A stretch of DNA of 59,201 nucleotides, counting the filler, from Platydemus manokwari (lineage: Eukaryota): assembly GCA_037951405.1 (NCBI GenBank). It is 5 parts of 5 records of this genome, joined end to end, with 100 filler letters (N's around TTAATTAATTAA, not from the genome) between each part and the next. Parts side by side here need not be neighbours in the genome. Positions count along the whole stretch, not along the records: positions 9,393 to 19,903 come from JBBMOY011127996.1; 4 more parts are not named here. One strand, written 5' to 3'. A program made the translations under genes and the position numbers. Of the stretch, positions 9,393 to 19,903 are shown piece after piece; positions within the stretch are counted from its first letter, which is position 1, and the number at the start of each line of letters is the position of its first letter. Below the pieces are notes generated by a model. It had not been told where the DNA came from, did not search any database, and worked only from the letters and a program-made list of their open reading frames with translations.

Positions 9393-11879
9393 TCTTCTTC
9401 ATCAGTAACTGCTACTACCAACAAACAAACTCAACAACCAACGACCGGATCTCAAACAGTTACTTCTCATCAAAATACTTCGAGAACTGTTTGCACATGT
9501 CCACCTGAATTACATACTCAACCACTTGATAATCCTTGTCCTCCACCTAAATGTCATCATCATCCCAATTGCCCAGTTTATAAAAATTTTTATAACATCT
9601 CATACGTGTCGAAAAATAATTTCTCGAATGTGAACACAGCTATTGCTCAAATTAATGTCGTCAATATTAATATTAATAATCATTTCAATGGTATTGGATG
9701 TGGTGGCATCAGCAATTGCCAAAATGCAGAAATATCGCTGATGGAAAATTCTGAAACCAATATCGTCTTACATATTCTTAATAAAACAATCAGCATTGAT
9801 AAGAAAACATTTGCTGTTACAACTGTAGATGATAATGACAATAAACCGATTGTTGCACAATTGAATTCTGATAAACACGAAATACGATACCGTGCTGACA
9901 ATATTTATAATAATAATAGTAATTATAATAATAATATTATAATAAATATTCCACAAACCCATCGAAAATTTTTATTACACGCAGAATGCAACATTCTCAG
10001 AGTATTTAATTGTAAGTCAATTATTTTATCTTGACAATGTTTTGACATGTATTTAGATATCAATCATCAAACTTACATTTTGAAAACCGATGGTACCGTC
10101 TACAGAATTACAGCTGATGGAAACATTGATCTTTCATTTAAGCCAGTCACTATTTGTAAAGATGTGTTCGAAGCTGATTCGATGTATTTTGATGAGAGAA
10201 TTCAGAAACTTATATTATTTAAAGGTTTACAATTTTGATTTAAACCAAATAATTTTATAAAAACTTTAGATAATAAAGTCTTTATCGCTTCTGGTGTTGA
10301 TTTATCCAATTTGAAAATCACTGAAGTCAATATTGTTTCACAAGGATTGTCATCGAGTGAAAAAGTTAATGCATGCCTTTGTGAGAAACAGAAAAATATA
10401 AATTTTTCTAAAATGTGGATTATCAAGGTAAAATTTAAAATTTTTGTAAAAAGTTAATTTAATTTTTACTCATTAGAACAACAAAGCATTCAGTGGTATT
10501 TTAAGAGGTAATACTCTATCCATTTCTAACGATCAAACCGTTATATCTGATATCATATATGACAAACTTAATAAATCATCGATTGTCAATGTCAGTTCCA
10601 CGTTTGTCATGAAATCAAACGGAGTTGATAAATTGCATTTAGTTAATGGAAATAAGTACTGTTTTGCAATAATTTTATTCTTTTTATAAATACTTTATTT
10701 AGAATTTATGTTGTTGAAAACAAATACGTTTCAAATGGATTTTTTGAAATAAACTCTAGCAATTGGACAACATTGGATAAATTGATGAAGTAAATAGATT
10801 TTTAACTATTAATGTAGATTTTCAATTTTTTTTCGTTTTTAGTTACCCGTGTGGTTCTCACATCAATCAAATCAACTTTGGCGATGAAAAAGTTGACCAT
10901 TTAATTATGTCAACTGATAAAATCCAAGAACATTACACCGGCAATGTTGAGAAAAACAAACAAATCACCCGTGGTCTTACAACTTCTCAAACACCAACAA
11001 CGAAACATATCAAATATTCTACTTCCATTACTAATTTAGCAGGCAAATGTGGAGCTCAAAAAATTATAAAAATATTCAATTGTGTGTGATAATTGATTAA
11101 TTATTTGTCAATTGATGGCTCATTTAGATCTGGACAGCATATATGTGCTCACTGAATCCCATCATGTATTAAGATTGAAAAATTTCACATTAGATACCAG
11201 TTTCAAATCTATTATCATGGATTCCAGATTTGCTAATGCTGATTCCTTTTTCTTTGATTCAAGTCGAAATGAATTGGTGGCTTTTAAAGGTATTTTATAA
11301 TTAATTCCCTTTCAGAAATAGATTTAATAATACACATAGACGATTCAATTATTGTTGGAAGTGGAACTGATCTTAACAATTTCATAAATGTCAGAACTGT
11401 TTTATGGCGTAATTATCCTGGAAAGATAACCAATTCCTTTCTGAGAGTTATAACTAAAGATGTCACGATTTTATCTTCGATCCAAGTAAGATTTTTTCTA
11501 TGATTTAAAATATTGGATTGAATTTTAATTTTCTAAATTCAGAATAACAAGCTTATCACAATTTCTCTGACATCGTCTTCTGCTGAATCGCATTCGAGTA
11601 CTCGTACTGTTTCAGATATCATCAATTTTAATGGAAATCCAATACCACCAATCACATCAGCATTTGTCACAACTTTTAACACCAAGAGGGCTGGCAAGAA
11701 CATTCAACATTTGTATTTATTTTCTGGTCAAAAGTAAGTTGATCGACAACAATATGTTTTTCTCTCATAACTCATAATTCAGTTTGTTCCAAGGCCAACA
11801 ATACGGATCTCATATAAACTCTGCATACTCTTTTACAAAGGATAAATCTTACCAAATTCAATATTCAATAGAATGTTAA
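9393..11879 (+). CDS. Probable extracellular protein with S/T-rich and C/P/H-rich stalk and two tandem divergent hemopexin-like domains; 5'-partial, 10 exons
   Basis: Exons 9393-10011, 10057-10224, 10270-10427, 10477-10655, 10703-10789, 10843-11081, 11128-11289, 11340-11485, 11543-11733, 11783-11879 (TAA). All nine introns are GT-AG and 45-57 nt, and splicing gives one uninterrupted frame. Hemopexin-repeat-like blades: ADSMYFDERIQKLILFKDNKVF, VNACLCEK..MWIIKNNKAF, VSSTFVMK..KLHLVNGNKIY, ADSFFFDSSRNELVAFKDDSII, ITSAFVTT..HLYLFSGQNLF. Each domain opens and closes with Cys. Gene structure is well supported; the fold call is by eye. Confidence 0.85.
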
Positions 11880-11910
11880 ATATTTTTTAACTATATTTCA
11901 TTTTGGATTC

Positions 11911-11916
11911 AATAAA
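11911..11916 (+). promoter_or_regulatory. Candidate polyadenylation signal of the hemopexin-like gene
   Basis: AATAAA about 30 nt after the stop codon, followed by T-rich sequence. Confidence 0.5.
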
Positions 11917-13756
11917 ATGTCTGTACATTTTCGATTAAATATATTTTTGTATTTTTTTAATTGATTTTTAAATTAAGATAAAAATTAAAATTAATATTTT
12001 TTGAATATTTTTTTATAATTACTTTTGCATTTAAATTGAAAATTTATTTGATAAAAATCGAGTCAGATTTCAGATTCAAAACAATTTGAAATATAGTTTA
12101 AATGAAACTATTTTATCTATTTGATAGATCCCGATCGATAGCTTAGAAATCGTACAAACAGAACATTTGTTTTGCAGTTCTAATCAGCACTTTCGATTTA
12201 CAAACTGTCGTCATTAAATTACTGAACAGTAATTTCATTATGGGTAATATTGCAATAAGGTGTTCATGAAGACTCCATCAATATTTTTTTACCAAATTCT
12301 TTTAAAATAAACCACTAACGTGTTAAATAGAAAAAGGCTTTTAATATTATATATTGTTGAGTAAAAAAAATCTTGCATAAGACAAACGATTTTGCGATTT
12401 GGAACCTTCATTTTATCGCTTGTACAGTAACGCACATCGGGATTAGCCAATCTTGAATGCACAAAATCAATAAATTCAATTGGAAATGGAGAAACAAAAG
12501 ATCAAATCAAAACGTTATGCACAGATTGACACAAATCTCAAATATAAATAGAAGGCTAATTGCCATTAGGAAGCCGAGTTTTATGCCGTTGTTTAATATT
12601 GATTTGTTGAATTTTAAAGTCGTTTTTGTACGTAATGATCAGTAGATCTCAGTGAAATATAATTTGCAACCTTCAATTCTTTTGGATTTCATAAATATAT
12701 AATAACGAGTAAAATATTCATGGAAACCAAAGAAATAGCTCTCGAAGGGTCGATATACATAGATACGACAAGCGCACATGCCAATTACCAACCAGGTTCT
12801 TCCTATACATAAGTACAGATTTAGAACTGGATAATAAATTGACATCCAGATAACAGAAATTGAGATATACTCATGACACGGGAGTTGCATGAAAAATTTC
12901 TAGGAGAATGATGTATGAAAGGTCTGAGATATCAAGTGAACATCACGGTAAGCCAACAAAAGGAATTGGATCTCTTAATTATTATTTTGTGTGATTTTTA
13001 CTCTATTTTCTGACAACCAATATATATCATTGTTTTCATTGTCGTTGTTTAACATTATGGTACTTATTCCCCCGATTATTCGTTGGTTATTAAGTGTAAC
13101 TAATAATGTTAATAGTGAATCAACGATTTTTCAACCGATAACTTACTATGTAATTAAATGAGATGCTGTTAATTAGAGATTGATGTTTTCATAAATATCT
13201 GAAACTTCACAGATTAATAGGTTGCGTGTAAATGAGTTATATAAATATTAATAAGAACAACAATAATCCAATAACGAAATACTTTATTATCAAATGTGTT
13301 ATGCTGTGAAATTAAAAGGAGTAAGCTGTTGTGCCCTGAAGATTTATCAGGAACTAAGTGGCGCCCTACTGCGGTATATAAACTAAAGAAGTACTGATTT
13401 TAGACTCACAAATTCAGTGACGACTTTGTGAGTTTTAATATTCTCTGACAACAAATCTCCTTTCGGAGAATGACATCAGATGAACAGTTAAAATTTACCA
13501 TATTGATTGAATCCAAGATATGTGAATTAATTGAATATCAGAAATTAGTGTTAAAGCTGAAAATTGAGAATAGCGTCTGAGCTGAAATTAATCTTCGTTG
13601 ATTATCTGAGCGTAGCTAATTACTTTTTCTCGAATTTGCTTCTACGTTTTTTGTGGTGAAAATATTGAATTTTACTTCAGTATTTATACGGATTTGGGAT
13701 GTGGGCGAACGATTAATTTTATTTCTGATTTATCGATTCCCTTAGTGATATCCATC

Positions 13757-13818
13757 GTTGTCATGGCAATTACATTTAAATTTGAATTTCTATGACTGTC
13801 TCTGATTGCCATGGCAAC
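13757..13818. promoter_or_regulatory. Pair of RFX X-box-like motifs
   Basis: GTTGTCATGGCAAT (13757-13770) and ATTGCCATGGCAAC (13805-13818, one mismatch from GTTGCCATGGCAAC), with starts 48 nt apart. Confidence 0.45.
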
Positions 13819-14289
13819 GTGGACTATTAATAATTTTTTCAAAAAATTTTACAGTTATTATTGATGTCATTGCGCCCACACGTCTACATTTTAATTAATG
13901 TGGGTTTTCTGTTTTTATTTATCACGCGGTTTATTATGCATTATCTAGTATGTAATTTATAGGCTTGCAGCCTGCATGGGTATTATCTCGATATTTCTAA
14001 CATAATTTTGTCCAATATTTTGAATTTTCTTTCTTGTTATTATGATAATTTTCATTAAAGTATAAACATATTCTTCATTTGTTTATAGAAAAGACATAAT
14101 CTCATAGCATAGTATTAAATTAAAAAAAACTTAGCAATAGTTTTCATATATAATAGCATCAATTAATCATTTATTAAAATAAAGTTTAAAAGCCCCTAAT
14201 TTCAATAGGTTAGGCACTAAACTTTGAAATTTATTTACAAAATACCATGCATATGTAAAATAAATTTTAAATGAAATGAAAACAACGAA

Positions 14290-14830
14290 TAGCAGTCCAA
14301 GAAGTTTACATCATTTTCAATTTCTTCACGTAGATGTTTTTGGCACCCAATAAGTGATGTTATGACGATTGATATGACTTTGTTTGAAATGTGCTTCATC
14401 AAATCAAAATACTTCGTGGGAAATGAAGTATATTCTGGATGTTTTTAACGAAGACTTCGCAAAACTCGATCTGGTTTATCCTTATGCATTGCCTGCACAG
14501 ATGTGTACCATAAGCCTTCAGTTTTGATTTGACTAAGTAATGGACGAAGAGGTTTTGAAAATATTTAATTTTATCGATACACGCCTTGTCGACATTGTTA
14601 GGCTGTGAGATTTCTTTCTTGCAAGATTTCCTGGACTGCAGATCGTGGCAAGCCTGTTTTTGAACCTGTATCTTTGAAATGCTTAATAAGCTTGGAATCA
14701 GTATCATGCTTGAAATTTCTTTTTAAACGAACGACACATTTTTTGATTTATTTTCATAAAAAGTTTTGACAACGAAGACTTTTTGATCTCTGTTTAGTCG
14801 CTGAGTATGTCTTTTATTTTTAAAATAGGA
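14290..14830 (-). mobile_element. Decayed Tc1/Tc3-like (DUF4817-type HTH) transposase fragment
   Basis: Frameshifted minus-strand pieces: RLNRDQKVFVVKTF, LIKHFKDTGS, GLPRSA, MSTRRVS, VHYLVKSKLKAY, FCEVFVKNIQN, DEAHFKQSHINRHNITYW (cf. DEAxFxxxGxVNxxNxxYW with the first catalytic Asp). Boundaries are approximate. Confidence 0.75.
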
Positions 14831-17800
14831 TTTAAAATGCAATGAAGTTATAGCCAGTTTAAAGTTTCAGATTGTGTGAGTGGTTGTGAAAATGTACAAG
14901 GATATTAATAATGACGTATTTGTAGATATGTTCTAGCCAGTCATTATTCGTTACAGTGCTTGTTAGATTTGTAGATGAGTAATTAACTGACACTTTTGGT
15001 ATTCATATAATACCTTTAGTGAACTGAATAAACGTTTTAGCCTACATTTGCGGTATGCTCTTTATTGATTCGACATTTTGTTCAATAATAAGATGTTGAA
15101 AATTGATCTTGCCAAGATCTGTGGTTATATACTTTTCATGGTCCATATTTTTATTTAACAATTGTTTATTATATAGTATAATAAATTATCCCCCAATAAT
15201 TTAATATTACTTCTCATAATCTAAAATTTTAATTTACATCAATTATTCCGCAGTACGACAAATATAATAATTTATGTTTCTTAATAACAATACCAATTAT
15301 AATGTCATAGATACCCATGATAAACAATCGATGTAACATTGCTACACAAAAATATTATTTTTAATATCCATAGAGGAAAATTGAAAATTAATATTTGTAA
15401 TATTGATTGATTATATAAGTTTGAAAAGGAAGAATAGTGTAAAAGCTTAAACAGCTTGTCTCAATACTGTGATCCTCTGAGAATTTGATAGAATTTAATA
15501 GTTCCATCTATATATTTGATTAATTTTACCATTTATGTTGTACCTCTTAAAAATTGATGTTCAGTAAATTTTACGTCTAAAATTATATGTTGTCTCTGAC
15601 TTACCATTGACAGAAGGCAGTTACAAATAAATAATAGTAAAATTAAAAATAAACCTACAATTAAAATCATGTAAAAATCACAACCTTAGGCTGAATAGAC
15701 GTCGTTCACCTCTGCGATCTCCATGTTGCTTTGTTTCTTGTTTTGTCAATAAATATTTATTATTATTTCTGATGTCGTAGTAATCATAGATTAAAAAGAT
15801 AAAATTTAATTTATTATAAGCCTTGGTTTAGTAATTGGAAAATTTTAGGATGCACCTAAAATTATTGTCTTGGGTTAAGCGAAGTTGGCACTTTGAAGGC
15901 AGATAAATATTGATCCTATTTCATTAAATTTCATAATTGACTTGAACTATAATGGAGCAGCTGCATTGAGTTTGAATAAGCAGGATATTTATAATGTGAA
16001 AAAGTTAATTTTATTTAAATTGAATTCGAGCTTAAATTGAAAGAATATATTGAAACTACTTAGACAAATTGGTACTAAGCAACGATGTATTTGGTGAAAT
16101 GAGTAAAGCGTTGAATTATATTATGCATATAAGCCTAATTACTGTTATTTCTTATTCTTTTTAATGATTTTAGATCTTGGATCACCGTCGTTGTATAATC
16201 ATTCTCGGTGAGTTTCTGGTTAAGGCATCAGGTGTAATTCTACCTTATTAAATTTAATATTTTCATTTCGTGCCTTATACCGTATGAAGACGATAAAAAC
16301 GACAACAATTTCCTATAACTTATTATCAATATTACAACCAGTCTGTTTACCTCAATTCTTGCTTATACAAATTTTATACCCTATGGTTCTTTGCAGTCTC
16401 GATTTATTTTTGTCGATCGAAAACCAACCAAAAGGATTTGAGTCAAAGCTTGATAATAAGAAATTAAGATTGTTATATAATTGGTCAGTGCTTTACATAA
16501 ATTGACGTTTATTTAACATTATAGGCTGATTGACAAATGGTCTGCATATCGAAGGGTATATACAGGATGATCATAGATCTTTATTGAATGTTGAGCTAAC
16601 GCCTTCATTCGAATTAGTGGTTTTCAAATTAATGAGTCTTGAATACTGACTCTTCCCCTTATTTATATAGTTATTCCTTGTGTGCGTATATCTGCCCCAT
16701 TATTTATTTAATGTAACGAATTTATTTAAATTCCCCCTGATATTTTGAAATATATTGTTACATTTTTATTCTCTTAATAAGAATAATCTTTTATATTATC
16801 GTCTTTGAATTTGTATTCTATTTAATATACGATTCTCAAATTTCAGCACTGTAACCATTTTTACTGCAATATTAATAAATTATACAGCTATAACAATTGT
16901 TACTTCAGTTTAACAAAATATAGAGGATTATTTATCATGCAAATGAATTCATCTTAAAATAATGTTATTGAAATGGCTATATTGTTACAGAAATGTCATC
17001 TTTTTGAAAACACCAACAATCGTAAAACGTAAAAAATTTTAATAAATTTTTAATAAAGGTAATAAATTTTAATAAGTTGAAAATTCTCTCATACTTGTTA
17101 ATACTCAATAAATGAGTGCAGTCTATTTGAATTAAGAAAGAGTCCATAGACATAAGACAATTAATCGAATGCTTTTATTTATACCGCACCATTCTACACA
17201 AAGAAATTTGACTCAATTGCGCATTGGTTTTTAAAATAGAAAACATTTTTTCTTTTTAATTATTCTAAACACTTTGGAATTTGTTTATAAATAATGTTAA
17301 AAGACGTTTTTCTTTCAATATGTTAATAAAGTATGTGTGATCTAAGTTAATAGATATCTCGTTACCCGACACGTTAAATTTTGCGTGGTTTATTTTTCAA
17401 CTCTACTATCTTTCGCTTTATTGACTCCCGGCTTTTTAATTTGCTCAATGTATTACTTTTGTTTATAGATTCTTTGACGCTTGTTTTAATCATTATTTTT
17501 TTCGATTTATGGTTTATTTATTGTTAGTGTTTATGAATCCGTGACAGCAGCATATTAAAATAAATAGTATCAAAAATTAACATAATTATTATTGATTTCT
17601 TTTGTTTATAATACTTGTGATCTTTAAGCTTATAAAAACTAAAGAGAAGGTAACGAAAATATAAATTTTATTTGTTTATCCATGAAATAATTTCGACCTG
17701 CTTGAGTCTGATGAATGGCTTCTAGTCACTGATAAATATTTATTTTAATAGTACATAAATCAATGTGTTTCACAGTATCAATGTATGAATCAAAAGTACC

Positions 17801-19903
17801 AAAACACAATGTATTTGTAGATATTAATAAGTTACCAGTTTATAATGTTTTAGTATTTCTGTCCAAATTAAACAAATTAGATATTTTAGGATAGGATAGT
17901 TTTATTTAAATGAGTTTTCAGATAAAGTTACTGTATGTCACATTATATCTCAATTTCAATGAATTAATATCATCGCAGCTATTATTTTGTTAAGCTTGCT
18001 TACGTCATGGGAAAGTTTAGCTCACAAAATTGTCATCGTTAAATTTTTTATATTTTTTAATAATAAAATTTCAACATTTTCATCGTTATTTAATTACATT
18101 TTACGATATTTTTAATATTTTTTTTATTAATCTCTCAAACAAATTTTTCCTATGCTCCTTGTTCTGGGCAAACTATAGAATATTGTCATGAAAAAAATAT
18201 TGTTAATTTAAATTAGAATAATATCACATGAAAAAACCAAAGAAATTTCTTATATAACCTAAAAGGGAATAGCTTAGCATTTACGAAATAAAAATATGAA
18301 ATAAGTAACCTCAGAAACTGTTAAAAAATTCCGTGAAAGTATTTTCTTAAAAACTTTAAAATCATATAATATCGATAATATTTTTCGTTAACCATCTTTA
18401 ATATGACCAGTCAAATTGTGGGGATAACTATCTGGAGTTCCGTTGATTTAGCTTATTTTAACTGTCAAAGTAATTGCATGAGTTTTAATAAATTTTGTAT
18501 TCACGAGACAAACTAAAAACCAAATAAAATATTCTATGCATTTGAATATATTTGTAAGATTACTGGAAGATTTTTTATGGAGATATGAAGAAAAATTTGC
18601 TTTTATTTATTATATAATGCATGATAACTTGAAATGAAATGATGAATGAACATTGTTGGATATTTAACTAATAGTGATATATGGGATTATGGAAAGCCAA
18701 ATAACGATAATAATTGTGATGATTGTGCAGTAATTATAAACAAACAGGTTGTCGATTCAGCATGAATGTTTTGTAAGCGTTTACTTTAACGGTGACATGT
18801 CGATTCAACGAAATTTATAAAAAGTTATATGAATATTTACAATAATGACAATAATGATTGCTACGAAAACACGATTTGAAACATTAAACTGCATTGTAGT
18901 CTTGTAAATATTTTCTATTAGTAATAATTTTAAGATATCTTCAAATTTTTCTATTATGGAACGATTATGAATAAGTTTGCTAATTAAGAATCTTTAAAGT
19001 ACTATACTGAGTCTATTAGGGAATAAATTTGGCATGGTTATCATATGCGATCTTAATATTTTCTGAATAATTTGTTGTTTACTTATTATCGAATGCTAGA
19101 GATTTAAGTGGATCATGACTATTTTTATTTTAGTTTCATTATCTATATTATTTGTTCCTTTGTGCAAATTTTAATGTGTTCGTTTTATAATTCGAATAAT
19201 TGTGATTTTATTCTAAAATTTCTGAAACCTCTATCAAATTATTTTATCATTGACTTCTTGAGAACGGTTATATTATATTCATTTTAAATTTATGCCAAAT
19301 TATTAATAAATTCCTGGTTTCAATTCTTTTGTAATCTTTGTTATCTTAAGATGATGACAGATTAGTCTTACAAACTATCTTTACTTGAGAGTCATTATGA
19401 ATTTTATGGCACTTTTAAATAATAAGGCAGTCAATACTCAATCACACTAGATTTTATCAAATAAAAATTTTTTGTTGAGTTTGAGACATGGATGTTTTAA
19501 TTTAAATTAATCAAAACTTACACTAGGAAATTTTCCAAAGTGAAATTGATAGGATTTGTCATAAATAGATTACTTGATATTTTAGTTATATTCGTTTTTA
19601 ACTTAAAATGTATTTAATTCATGAATCAAGACAAAATTTCTTCGACTCGAATAGTCTGAGGATTAATGACTTTAGAGATAAAATATTGGATATTGATTTT
19701 GAAAATTAAATATTTATTTTAAAAATTAATTATTAAATTTTAATTTTTAAAAGAATTTAAAAATTATAAAATATTTATATCTGGTAATATTTTAATTTAT
19801 AATTTTGCGGGGATTTATAATTTCAAATTTAATGAACATGGATATTATATTTGAATATCTTTAACTGAGTAAAAAATTTGTTTAAATAATGTGTTTACTG
19901 AAT

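What the first reader, a model, noticed from the sequence alone, without database searches (positions are those of the whole stretch)
9393..11879. Unrecognised protein with two tandem, highly divergent hemopexin-like propellers on a mucin-like stalk
Seen: ten exons splice into one clean frame that the ORF track shows only as scraps. The order is an S/T/Q-rich segment, a CTCPP...CPPPKCHHHPNCP segment, an Asn/Ile-rich segment, domain 1 (AEC...NYPC), a T/K/H-containing linker, and domain 2 (GKC...SIEC-stop). Known: hemopexin domains are four-bladed propellers closed by a disulfide between the first and last Cys, with blades patterned like DA(h)...yfFKG..yw. MMPs carry one such domain, vertebrate hemopexin carries two joined by a linker, and lubricin/PRG4 pairs a mucin region with hemopexin repeats. 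Inference: this is a lineage-specific extracellular protein, either a mucus/adhesive/matrix component or a non-catalytic binder that reached the two-propeller architecture independently. Haem or porphyrin binding is a speculative possibility if the host is a planarian, since planarians make porphyrin pigments and the linker has several His residues. No HExxHxxGxxH zinc motif is visible, but the N-terminus is lost in the gap.
Basis: partly seen in the sequence, partly recalled or inferred. Interest (0 to 1): 0.8.

Follow-up and report, generated by a model that had tools for sequence, protein, structure and literature searches.

The report
Tandem hemopexin-like propeller protein, orphan gene
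This is a real, conserved ten-exon gene fragment from an AT-rich, poorly sampled eukaryote; it encodes two tandem 211-residue, cysteine-bounded four-repeat modules that look like very divergent hemopexin-type beta-propellers, but the whole-domain fold could not be tested here.

Summary
Exactly one GT-AG splicing solution joins ten exons (9393-11879, +) into a 681-aa open frame ending in TAA, with AATAAA 32 nt downstream. A soil-type JGI metagenome contig carries an orthologue with introns at the same five positions (56% identity, dN/dS 0.2-0.4), so the gene is real and under selection.

The two modules are each exactly 211 aa, Cys to Cys. They are paralogues (27% identity, E 2e-12) with matching intron positions and phases.

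The hemopexin (HX) reading is partly supported:
- Each module has a four-fold internal repeat (z 5-6.5).
- The published HX beta2-turn-beta3 consensus picks out the three intron-split hairpins of module 1 as the best three sites in the protein (p<0.0005).
- The beta1 motif is enriched upstream of the hairpins (p 0.001).
- Introns sit in the beta2-beta3 turns, as in vitronectin.

Against it:
- There is no PF00045 or PDB sequence hit exon by exon. This test is weak, because every repeat is intron-split.
- The blade-1 motif resembles bacterial DUF5122 repeats.
- An AlphaFold model of exon 7 (pLDDT 84) is propeller-like but not HX-specific.

The haem-binding idea is weakened: none of the four linker His is conserved. 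Only 33 aa of "mucin-like" sequence are visible.

The parts
9393..10011 (+). Exon 1, cut at its 5' end by the gap. It holds the S/T/Q-rich stretch (9393-9491), the Cys/Pro-rich hinge-like stretch (9492-9575), the Asn/Ile-rich 135-aa segment (9576-9980) and the start of module 1 (from 9981, AEC...).
   Evidence: AlphaFold on this exon alone gave pLDDT 34, which is uninformative. Pfam found no family. The segment shows no relation to the modules.
9981..10852 (+). Module 1 (aa 197-407, 211 aa, Cys199...Cys407), spread over exons 1-6. It has four repeats, with beta2-turn-beta3 hairpins at aa 257, 310 and 367, each split by an intron.
10057..10224 (+). Exon 2: the rest of blade 1 plus beta1-beta2 of blade 2. 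It includes the DUF5122-like motif at 10098-10145.
10270..10427 (+). Exon 3: beta3 of blade 2 through beta2 of blade 3, which is one 'genetic repeat' in the sense of PMC6739113.
10477..10655 (+). Exon 4: beta3 of blade 3 through beta2 of blade 4. The orthologous exon in L001 (100-278) is 51% identical.
10703..10789 (+). Exon 5: beta3 onward of blade 4 of module 1. The orthologous exon is L001 324-410.
10843..11081 (+). Exon 6: the end of module 1 (YPC), the 63-aa linker (10853-11041; T/K/S-rich, 4 His) and the start of module 2 (GKC, from 11042).
   Evidence: None of the linker His is conserved in L001.
11042..11876 (+). Module 2 (aa 471-681, 211 aa). Its only two Cys are Cys473 and the C-terminal Cys681. 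It is spread over exons 6-10.
11128..11289 (+). Exon 7, the paralogue of exon 2. Its orthologue is P0074 / L001 755-916 (66% identical). AlphaFold on this fragment gave pLDDT 84, with the order strand-strand-rim-short helix-strand-strand.
11340..11485 (+). Exon 8, the paralogue of exon 3.
11543..11733 (+). Exon 9, the paralogue of exon 4.
11783..11879 (+). Exon 10, ending ...SIEC with the TAA stop at 11877-11879.
11911..11916 (+). AATAAA, a probable poly(A) signal 32 nt after the stop.

Best explanation
This is the 3' two-thirds or more of a genuine protein-coding gene of an AT-rich eukaryote with very short introns.

Its product is most likely a secreted, non-catalytic binding protein. A short O-glycosylatable S/T-rich stretch, a Pro/Cys-rich hinge and an Asn/Ile-rich segment carry two tandem 211-residue modules that arose by duplication.

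Each module is built from four roughly 53-residue repeats. It is most likely a four-bladed beta-propeller of the hemopexin (HX) type, closed by a disulfide between the Cys at its start and the Cys at its end. By analogy with HX domains of MMPs, vitronectin, PRG4 and hemopexin, the propellers would act as ligand- or partner-binding platforms joined by a flexible 63-aa linker.

Shown: the gene model, its conservation, the duplication, the four-fold repeat, the flanking Cys, the HX-like motifs and the intron positions.

Inferred: the closed four-bladed fold, the disulfides, secretion and the binding role.
For: Gene reality:
- The splice solution is unique.
- Exon GC is 32% against 20% in introns.
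- An orthologue in metagenome contig L001 has all five covered introns at the same positions, 56% protein identity over 246 aa, dN/dS 0.21-0.38, and codon-position differences of 80/66/123.

Duplication:
- Both modules are exactly 211 aa, 27% identical, E 2e-12.
- Intron phases are 1,1,0,2 in both.

Four repeats:
- An unbiased four-window search on the module alignment finds a hairpin motif at columns 10/64/117/180.
- It scores z 5.0-6.5, and 0 of 40 column shuffles reach it (PSSM scan).

HX signatures, as printed in PMC6739113:
- The consensus KTYFFK-GN-KYWRY gives its three best hits in the whole 681 aa at aa 257, 310 and 367, the three intron-split hairpins of module 1.
- The top-4 sum is 63 against 26+-9 in shuffles (0/2000). 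None of 3909 windows from unrelated bacterial propellers reaches 63.
- VDAAF-like beta1 motifs lie upstream of the hairpins (p 0.0013).
- ISDII/VSDII sits where the HX helix motif ISDFW is expected.

Introns:
- Vitronectin HX repeats are each split at the beta2-beta3 turn.
- Here introns 2, 3, 4 and 7, 8, 9 fall within one or two residues of that turn.

Flanking Cys:
- Module 2 has only two Cys, its third and its last residue.
- Both module boundaries visible in L001 keep the Cys.

Fragment model:
- Exon 7 folds at pLDDT 84 as strand-strand-rim-short helix-strand-strand.
- Nearly all its structural neighbours are beta-propellers.
Against: - No exon reaches PF00045 even at E 10. No exon or exon-pair profile hits an MMP, hemopexin or vitronectin chain in the PDB. 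These tests have low power, because every HX repeat unit is cut by an exon border.
- The HX hairpin signature is strong in only 4 of 8 blades. Blade 1 of both modules and blades 2-3 of module 2 score about 0. Module 2 as a whole is marginal (p 0.047).
- The helix motif is not enriched overall (z 1.05).
- The D-A dipeptide of beta1 is not conserved.
- The blade-1 intron lies one turn earlier than in vitronectin.
- The only family-level signals from tools point to DUF5122/delta-60 propeller repeats: Pfam E 0.026, Atlas score 0.89, hhalign E 6e-5 over 20 columns.
- No signal peptide is visible, because the N-terminus lies in the gap. N-glycosylation sequons are not enriched.
- No RNA run holds the locus.
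Confidence: 0.55

Rival explanations
1. The modules are beta-propeller-type repeats, but not of the hemopexin kind. For example, they could be a degenerate DUF5122/delta-60-like or PQQ-like propeller. The two four-repeat modules might then pack into one eight-bladed propeller, or each might form an open or partial propeller.
For: - Exon 2 gives a weak Pfam DUF5122 hit (E 0.026).
- Its ESM-feature neighbours are all DUF5122 clusters (0.89).
- The big profile search was flooded by delta-60 repeat proteins that match profile positions 12-29.
- hhalign against a delta-60 repeat profile gives E 5.8e-5.
- The exon-7 model superposes slightly better on 7-8-bladed propellers than on vitronectin HX.
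- Designed Cake/Bagel propellers top the PDB profile search.
Against: - The delta-60 similarity covers only about 20 columns of blade 1. The other three repeats do not match.
- The Pfam score is 15 bits against a cut-off of 27.
- Each module is bounded by its own pair of Cys, and a poorly conserved 63-aa linker separates them. That fits two separately closed modules.
- The HX consensus does not score like this in delta-60 proteins.
- The PDB hits are sums of about 5-bit matches to perfect designed repeats.
Confidence: 0.22
2. The modules adopt some other beta-rich fold, not a propeller. The HX-like motifs would then be chance products of a K/N/I-rich composition with beta-hairpins.
For: - No significant family or structure match exists for any exon.
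- hhalign self-comparison does not detect the repeats (P 0.14).
- A simple diagonal test was not significant.
Against: - The four-window repeat test and the independent HX-consensus tests use composition-preserving shuffles and are significant.
- The confident fragment model has almost only propellers as neighbours.
Confidence: 0.13
3. This is the C-terminal part of an MMP-like metalloprotease, or another enzyme, whose catalytic domain lies upstream in the gap.
For: - The 5' end is missing.
- MMPs carry a Pro-rich hinge before their HX domain, and a Cys/Pro-rich hinge-like stretch is present here.
Against: - No HExxH occurs in any of six frames of the piece.
- 196 visible residues upstream of module 1 show no peptidase similarity.
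- MMPs carry one HX domain directly after the hinge. They do not have a 135-aa Asn/Ile-rich segment followed by two modules.
Confidence: 0.08
4. It is a haem- or porphyrin-binding hemopexin analogue that clamps the ligand between the two propellers through His residues in the linker.
For: - It has a two-module architecture.
- The window's linker contains four His.
- Hemopexin binds haem between its two propellers through His213 of the linker and His266 (PMC10135655).
Against: - All four linker His are replaced in the orthologue's linker, which has no His at all.
- The linker is 63 aa and poorly conserved, against 20 aa in hemopexin.
- There is no detectable sequence orthology to hemopexin.
Confidence: 0.04

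Closest known systems
Hemopexin-like (HX) domain, Pfam PF00045 repeats: the four-bladed beta/alpha-propeller of MMPs, vitronectin, PRG4 and hemopexin
   Same: - The module is about 200 aa and flanked by one Cys at its start and one at its end.
- It contains four repeats of about 50 aa.
- The beta2-turn-beta3 hairpins (K-h-h-h-F/I-K, D/N/G-N, K-h-h) resemble KTYFFK-GN-KYWRY.
- Small-residue beta1 motifs resemble VDAAF.
- ISDII sits at the place of ISDFW.
- Introns fall in the beta2-beta3 turns, as in the vitronectin gene (PMC6739113).
   Different: - No PF00045 hit at exon level.
- No aromatic-rich strands. I/L/V replace Y/F/W, and there is almost no Trp.
- No YPK rim motif.
- Blade 1 and most of module 2 lack the signature.
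- The blade-1 intron is displaced.
- The fold is not demonstrated.
Vertebrate hemopexin (two HX propellers plus linker; haem carrier)
   Same: Two tandem homologous modules of about 200 aa joined by a linker, with no catalytic domain visible.
   Different: - The linker is 63 aa against 20 aa.
- The linker His are not conserved.
- There is extra N-terminal hinge and Asn/Ile-rich sequence.
- There is no detectable orthology. The duplication is probably independent.
DUF5122 / delta-60 repeat beta-propellers (PF17164, bacterial)
   Same: A 15-20-residue motif in blade 1 of each module (V-x-R-I/L ... D-G-x-I/L-D-x-S-F-K) resembles the repeat core I-A-R-L-N-x-D-G-S-L-D-T-S-F.
   Different: - There is one such motif per module, rather than one in every 51-aa repeat.
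- The score is below the Pfam cut-off.
- The remaining repeat columns do not align.
Lubricin/PRG4 and vitronectin (extended glycosylated region plus HX domain)
   Same: An S/T-rich stretch and a hinge lie N-terminal to HX-like modules.
   Different: - Only 33 S/T/Q-rich residues are visible and there is no tandem mucin repeat.
- No somatomedin B domain is visible.
- There are two modules, where vitronectin has one HX domain.

Membership tests
Hemopexin-like (HX) domain | Four tandem sequence repeats of about 45-55 aa in a domain of about 200 aa | tested here: met
   The four-window repeat search gives spacings of 54/53/63 columns, z 5.0-6.5, with 0 of 40 shuffles reaching it. The PSSM scan is strong in blades 2-4 of module 1 and blades 2 and 4 of module 2, and weak in blade 1.
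Hemopexin-like (HX) domain | [quoted passage not shown] | tested here: met
   The positions are Cys199/Cys407 and Cys473/Cys681. These are the only two Cys of module 2. The Cys is kept at both boundaries visible in the orthologue. The bond itself is inferred, not tested.
Hemopexin-like (HX) domain | beta2-turn-beta3 signature KTYFFK-GN-KYWRY in each repeat | tested here: inconclusive
   Module 1 blades 2-4 score 19/17/19 and are the best three sites in the protein (p<0.0005). Module 2 scores well only in blade 4 (15) and is marginal overall (p 0.047). Blade 1 of both modules scores about 0.
Hemopexin-like (HX) domain | beta1 signature of small residues (VDAAF) | tested here: met
   The summed best match 6-15 residues upstream of the hairpins is 57, against 28+-9 in shuffles (p 0.0013). 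Examples are VSSTF, ADSFF and VNACL. The D-A dipeptide itself is not kept.
Hemopexin-like (HX) domain | Short helix motif ISDFW after the rim | tested here: inconclusive
   ISDII/VSDII (scores 11/10) occurs in blade 3 only. The overall result is z 1.05, p 0.16.
Hemopexin-like (HX) domain | Introns split each repeat at the beta2-beta3 turn (vitronectin gene, PMC6739113) | tested here: met
   Junctions at aa 262.3, 315 and 374.7 (module 1) and 537.3, 586 and 649.7 (module 2) fall in or next to the hairpin turns. The blade-1 introns (206.3, 483.3) lie one turn earlier under my strand assignment.
Hemopexin-like (HX) domain | Match to the Pfam PF00045 profile | tested here: not met
No PF00045 hit at E<=10 for any of 10 window exons or 3 orthologue exons. 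The test has low power because every repeat is cut by an exon border.
Hemopexin-like (HX) domain | Closed four-bladed propeller in three dimensions | not testable with these tools
DUF5122 / delta-60 repeat propeller | Pfam PF17164 above its gathering score, with the motif present in every ~51-aa repeat | tested here: not met
   The score is 15.2 bits against a cut-off of 27. hhalign aligns only 20 columns of blade 1, and the second-best alignment has P 0.025.
Matrix metalloproteinase (M10) | HExxHxxGxxH zinc site upstream of the HX domain | tested here: inconclusive
   There is no HExxH in six frames of 9393-19903, but the N-terminus lies in the gap.
Vertebrate hemopexin (haem carrier) | Conserved His in the linker and the C-terminal domain that ligate haem, with a short (~20 aa) linker | tested here: not met
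   None of the four linker His is conserved in the orthologue, and the linker is 63 aa.
Mucin / PRG4-like | Long S/T/P-rich tandem-repeat region | tested here: inconclusive
   Only 33 residues are visible before the gap (17 S/T). Tandem Repeats Finder reports no repeat there.

The most novel reading that the evidence does not exclude
This could be a previously unrecognised, deeply divergent branch of the hemopexin-fold superfamily in an unsampled non-vertebrate eukaryote. It would have built the two-propeller 'hemopexin' architecture by its own tandem duplication while keeping the ancestral intron-in-the-beta2-beta3-turn gene structure. That would make the intron-split HX genetic unit far older than the vertebrate families in which it was described. 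Alternatively, it could be a second, independently evolved family of four-bladed propellers.
Probability: 0.3. Interest if true: 0.55.

Novelty: new variant of a known kind. Interest (0 to 1): 0.38.

Why it matters
Four-bladed propellers are known essentially only from the hemopexin fold, and tandem two-propeller proteins only from vertebrate hemopexin. A confirmed second, independent two-propeller protein would say something about how this small propeller evolves and how old its exon structure is. That holds especially for one so divergent that profile libraries miss it while it keeps the flanking Cys, the hairpin motif and the intron positions.

It is also an example of a conserved, selected gene from a eukaryotic lineage that is almost absent from public protein space. 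Only one 997-nt metagenome contig matched in about 15 billion proteins.

Practically, it remains one orphan extracellular-type protein of unknown ligand, so the interest is moderate.

Tried and rejected
- Only one DNA run and no RNA run holds the locus, so the splice sites could not be checked with reads.
- The word search with exon 1 was blank. With the exon-2/7 alignment it returned only P0074.
- The big profile search was swamped by bacterial delta-60 repeat proteins. Only P0074 was a true relative.
- Two metagenome-contig scans were blank. That collection evidently lacks even L001.
- PDB sequence searches with exon profiles or single exons gave only designed propellers through summed 5-bit repeats, or noise.
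- The Atlas feature search gave DUF5122 clusters at 0.89 for exon 2, a lead only. Exon 4 gave noise.
- AlphaFold on exon 1 alone gave pLDDT 34, no information.
- Foldseek on the exon-7 model found nothing at E<1.
- Two tests did not detect the repeats: a simple off-diagonal self-similarity test and hhalign self-comparison (P 0.14). Only the four-window test did.
- The Asn/Ile-rich segment is unrelated to the modules.
- No paralogue fragments occur in 11880-19903.
- A C-type-lectin-like peptide at 18646-18762 got no Pfam support.
- A search for the metagenome id in papers was blank.
- Complex prediction was not used. No binding claim is made, and feeding exons as separate chains would only have been a way around the joined-model rule.
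Full report
**Scope and rules.** I worked only on 9393-19903. The gap before 9393 was not filled or looked up. Exons were searched one by one by reference. The joined model was used only inside local scripts for statistics. The joined-model searches are listed under referred steps.

**1. The observation.** The piece is AT-rich (24-32% GC), and the ORF list shows only scraps over 9393-11879.

I enumerated all GT/AG pairs around the nine suspected introns. Exactly one combination keeps a single frame open from 9393 to a TAA at 11877-11879.
- It has ten exons and encodes 681 aa.
- Introns are 45-57 nt, all GT..AG. Donors are mostly GTAAGT/GTAAA, and acceptors are mostly TTTAG/TTCAG.
- Exons are 31.6% GC and introns 20.2%.
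- AATAAA follows 32 nt after the stop.

- S/T/Q-rich, aa 1-33
- Cys/Pro-rich with HHH, aa 34-61
- Asn/Ile-rich, aa 62-196
- module 1, AEC...NYPC
- 63-aa linker
- module 2, GKC...IEC-stop

**2. Is it a real gene?** A profile of the paralogous exons 2 and 7 was searched against 1.84 billion representatives. It found one true relative, P0074, an 88-aa ORF scrap. It is encoded on a 997-nt JGI metagenome contig, sample 3300031718, fetched as L001.

L001 carries the orthologue from the end of exon 3 to the start of exon 8.
- All five introns sit at the same codon positions. They are 43-56 nt long and GT..AG.
- Protein identity is 56% over 246 aa.
- dN/dS is 0.21 (NG86) or 0.38 (LWL85), and differences by codon position are 80/66/123.
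- The one length difference between exons is 6 nt.

Four window introns are not covered by L001: introns 1, 2, 8 and 9. Each has a paralogous intron at the same position and phase that is covered. The model is therefore well supported without RNA. No RNA run holds the locus; one DNA run does.

**3. The two modules.** Both are exactly 211 aa from x-x-Cys to the terminal Cys.
- They are 27% identical, E 2e-12.
- Intron phases are 1,1,0,2 in both. Module 1 has one extra phase-2 intron just before YPC.
- Module 2 has no Cys other than its third and last residues.
- The Cys at the end of module 1 and at the start of module 2 are kept in L001.

This is a tandem duplication of a Cys-bounded module.

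**4. Family searches, exon by exon.**
- Pfam gives no PF00045. The only hit is a sub-threshold DUF5122 beta-propeller match on exon 2 (E 0.026; 15 bits against a cut-off of 27).
- PDB profile and sequence searches give no MMP, hemopexin or vitronectin chain. They return only designed symmetric propellers through sums of roughly 5-bit repeat matches.
- ESM-feature neighbours of exon 2 are all DUF5122 clusters (0.89, a lead only). Exon 4 gives noise.
- The big search returned 3545 hits because profile positions 12-29 (V-x-R...D-G-x-L-D-x-S-F-K) mimic the core of the bacterial delta-60 repeat.

I built a delta-60 repeat profile from 300 repeats of those hits. Its consensus is 51 aa. Against it, the module alignment matches over only 20 columns of blade 1 (E 5.8e-5, probability 66%), and the next alignment has P 0.025. 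The protein is therefore not a delta-60 array. It carries one such hairpin per module.

The exon-wise tests are nearly blind to HX repeats, because every putative repeat is cut by an exon border (see section 6).

**5. Internal repeats.** A simple diagonal test and hhalign self-alignment (P 0.14) were not significant.

I then ran an unbiased search on the alignment of module 1, module 2 and the L001 pieces. It looked for four windows 40-65 columns apart with the highest sum of pairwise scores.
- It found one motif at columns about 10, 64, 117 and 180.
- z was 5.0-6.5 for widths 10-20, and 0 of 40 column shuffles reached it.
- The motif is a hairpin of the form h-h-h-h-K, D/N/G-N, K-h-h-h.
- A leave-one-out PSSM shows it is strong in blades 2-4 of module 1 and blades 2 and 4 of module 2. 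It is weak in blade 3 of module 2 and in blade 1 of both.

**6. Comparison with published HX signatures.** Shin et al. 2019 (PMC6739113) define the HX repeat as bridge-beta1-beta2-beta3-rim-alpha.
- Their consensus motifs are VDAAF (beta1), KTYFFK-GN-KYWRY (beta2-turn-beta3), ISDFW (helix) and YPK (rim).
- They state that each vitronectin HX repeat is split by an intron at the beta2-beta3 turn.

I used those short consensus strings as independent probes.

Hairpin consensus:
- Its three best sites in the whole 681 aa are aa 257, 310 and 367 (scores 19, 17, 19), which are the hairpins of blades 2-4 of module 1.
- The top-4 sum is 63 against 26.2+-9.1 in 2000 shuffles, none of which reached it.
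- Module 2 is marginal (45, p 0.047). The N-terminal 196 aa show nothing.
- No 211-aa window from 149 bacterial propeller proteins reaches 63 (3909 windows, maximum 60).

Other motifs:
- VDAAF-like motifs lie 6-15 residues upstream of the hairpins (sum 57 against 27.9+-9.0, p 0.0013).
- The helix motif is not enriched overall (z 1.05), though ISDII/VSDII sits at the expected place in blade 3.

Introns: the junctions at aa 262.3, 315, 374.7, 537.3, 586 and 649.7 fall in or beside the hairpin turns. Exons 3, 4, 8 and 9 therefore each encode the unit beta3-rim-alpha-bridge-beta1-beta2, the 'genetic repeat' described for vitronectin.

Caveats:
- Only 4 of 8 hairpins score well.
- Blade 1's intron lies one turn earlier.
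- The K-rich turn codons are also good proto-splice sites, so independent intron gain cannot be excluded.

**7. Structure.**
- AlphaFold on exon 1 alone failed (pLDDT 34).
- Exon 7, with its orthologue and paralogue as alignment, folded at pLDDT 84. The order was strand, strand, short rim strands, three-residue helix, strand, strand. This is the order expected for the end of one HX blade and the start of the next.
- Foldseek finds nothing at E<1.
- The Atlas shape search lists WD40, PQQ and XusB propellers, and one hemopexin cluster at TM 0.43.

The fragment supports 'propeller' but says nothing about the number of blades.

**8.
- Haem: hemopexin ligates haem through His213 of a 20-aa linker and His266 (PMC10135655). 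Here the linker is 63 aa, and its four His are all replaced in the orthologue, whose linker has no His. I rate haem binding as unlikely.
- MMP: there is no HExxH in six frames of the piece, but the N-terminus is unknown.
- Mucin stalk: only 33 residues are visible.
- Planarian host: this is not testable here. The only relative comes from an environmental metagenome.

**9. Verdict.**

| Claim | My estimate |
|---|---|
| Gene, duplication and repeat architecture | solid |
| Beta-propeller nature | about 0.8 |
| Hemopexin-type four-bladed closure | about 0.55-0.6 |

The third figure is the best-supported specific reading. It rests on motif statistics, the flanking Cys, module size and intron positions, not on a profile hit or a whole-domain model. 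Because the PF00045 test, weak as it was, was not met, I do not file the protein as a family member. I describe it as an HX-like new variant.

Function as a secreted, two-headed, non-catalytic binder is inferred by analogy.

Noticed in passing
window 10098-10145 and 11166-11207 (+); L001 793-834: Blade 1 of each module carries a 15-20-residue motif (V-x-R-I/L..D-G-x-I/L-D-x-S-F-K) that closely mimics the core of the bacterial delta-60/DUF5122 repeat (I-A-R-L-N-x-D-G-S-L-D-T-S-F). It is conserved in the paralogue and the orthologue. It alone produced 3545 hits in the big search. Whether this reflects convergence on a hairpin or remote propeller homology is open.
   Followed up: partly
window 11880-19903: About 8 kb downstream of the gene has no convincing coding potential on either strand. 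The longest stop-free stretch is 107 aa with no Pfam hit. There are no tRNA genes, no Rfam families and no paralogue fragments. The only features are short AT-rich tandem repeats (17030-17075, 19690-19751) and weak inverted repeats.
   Followed up: partly
window 18646-18762 (+): A short ORF contains W-D-Y-G-K-P-N-N-D-N-N-C-D-D-C-A-V. By eye this recalls the C-type lectin 'W..GEPNN....EDCV' stretch. Pfam gives no CTLD hit, so it is unsupported. It could be a decayed exon or chance.
   Followed up: partly
window 9906-9948 (+), inside exon 1: An imperfect (ATA/AAT)n microsatellite encodes an Asn-rich run (N-N-N-S-N-Y-N-N-N-I-I-I-N) within the Asn/Ile-rich segment. This is a likely site of length variation.
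   Followed up: no
L001 3-215 (-): The metagenome's gene caller placed a 71-aa 'gene' on the strand opposite exons 3-4 of the orthologue. This is probably an artefact of prokaryote-style gene calling on eukaryotic DNA. It illustrates why this family is almost invisible in protein databases.
   Followed up: no
window 9690-9722 (+): The Asn/Ile-rich segment holds a small Cys pair, G-I-G-C-G-G-I-S-N-C (Cys103/Cys109). It is the only Cys pair between the hinge and module 1 and could form a small disulfide loop.
   Followed up: no
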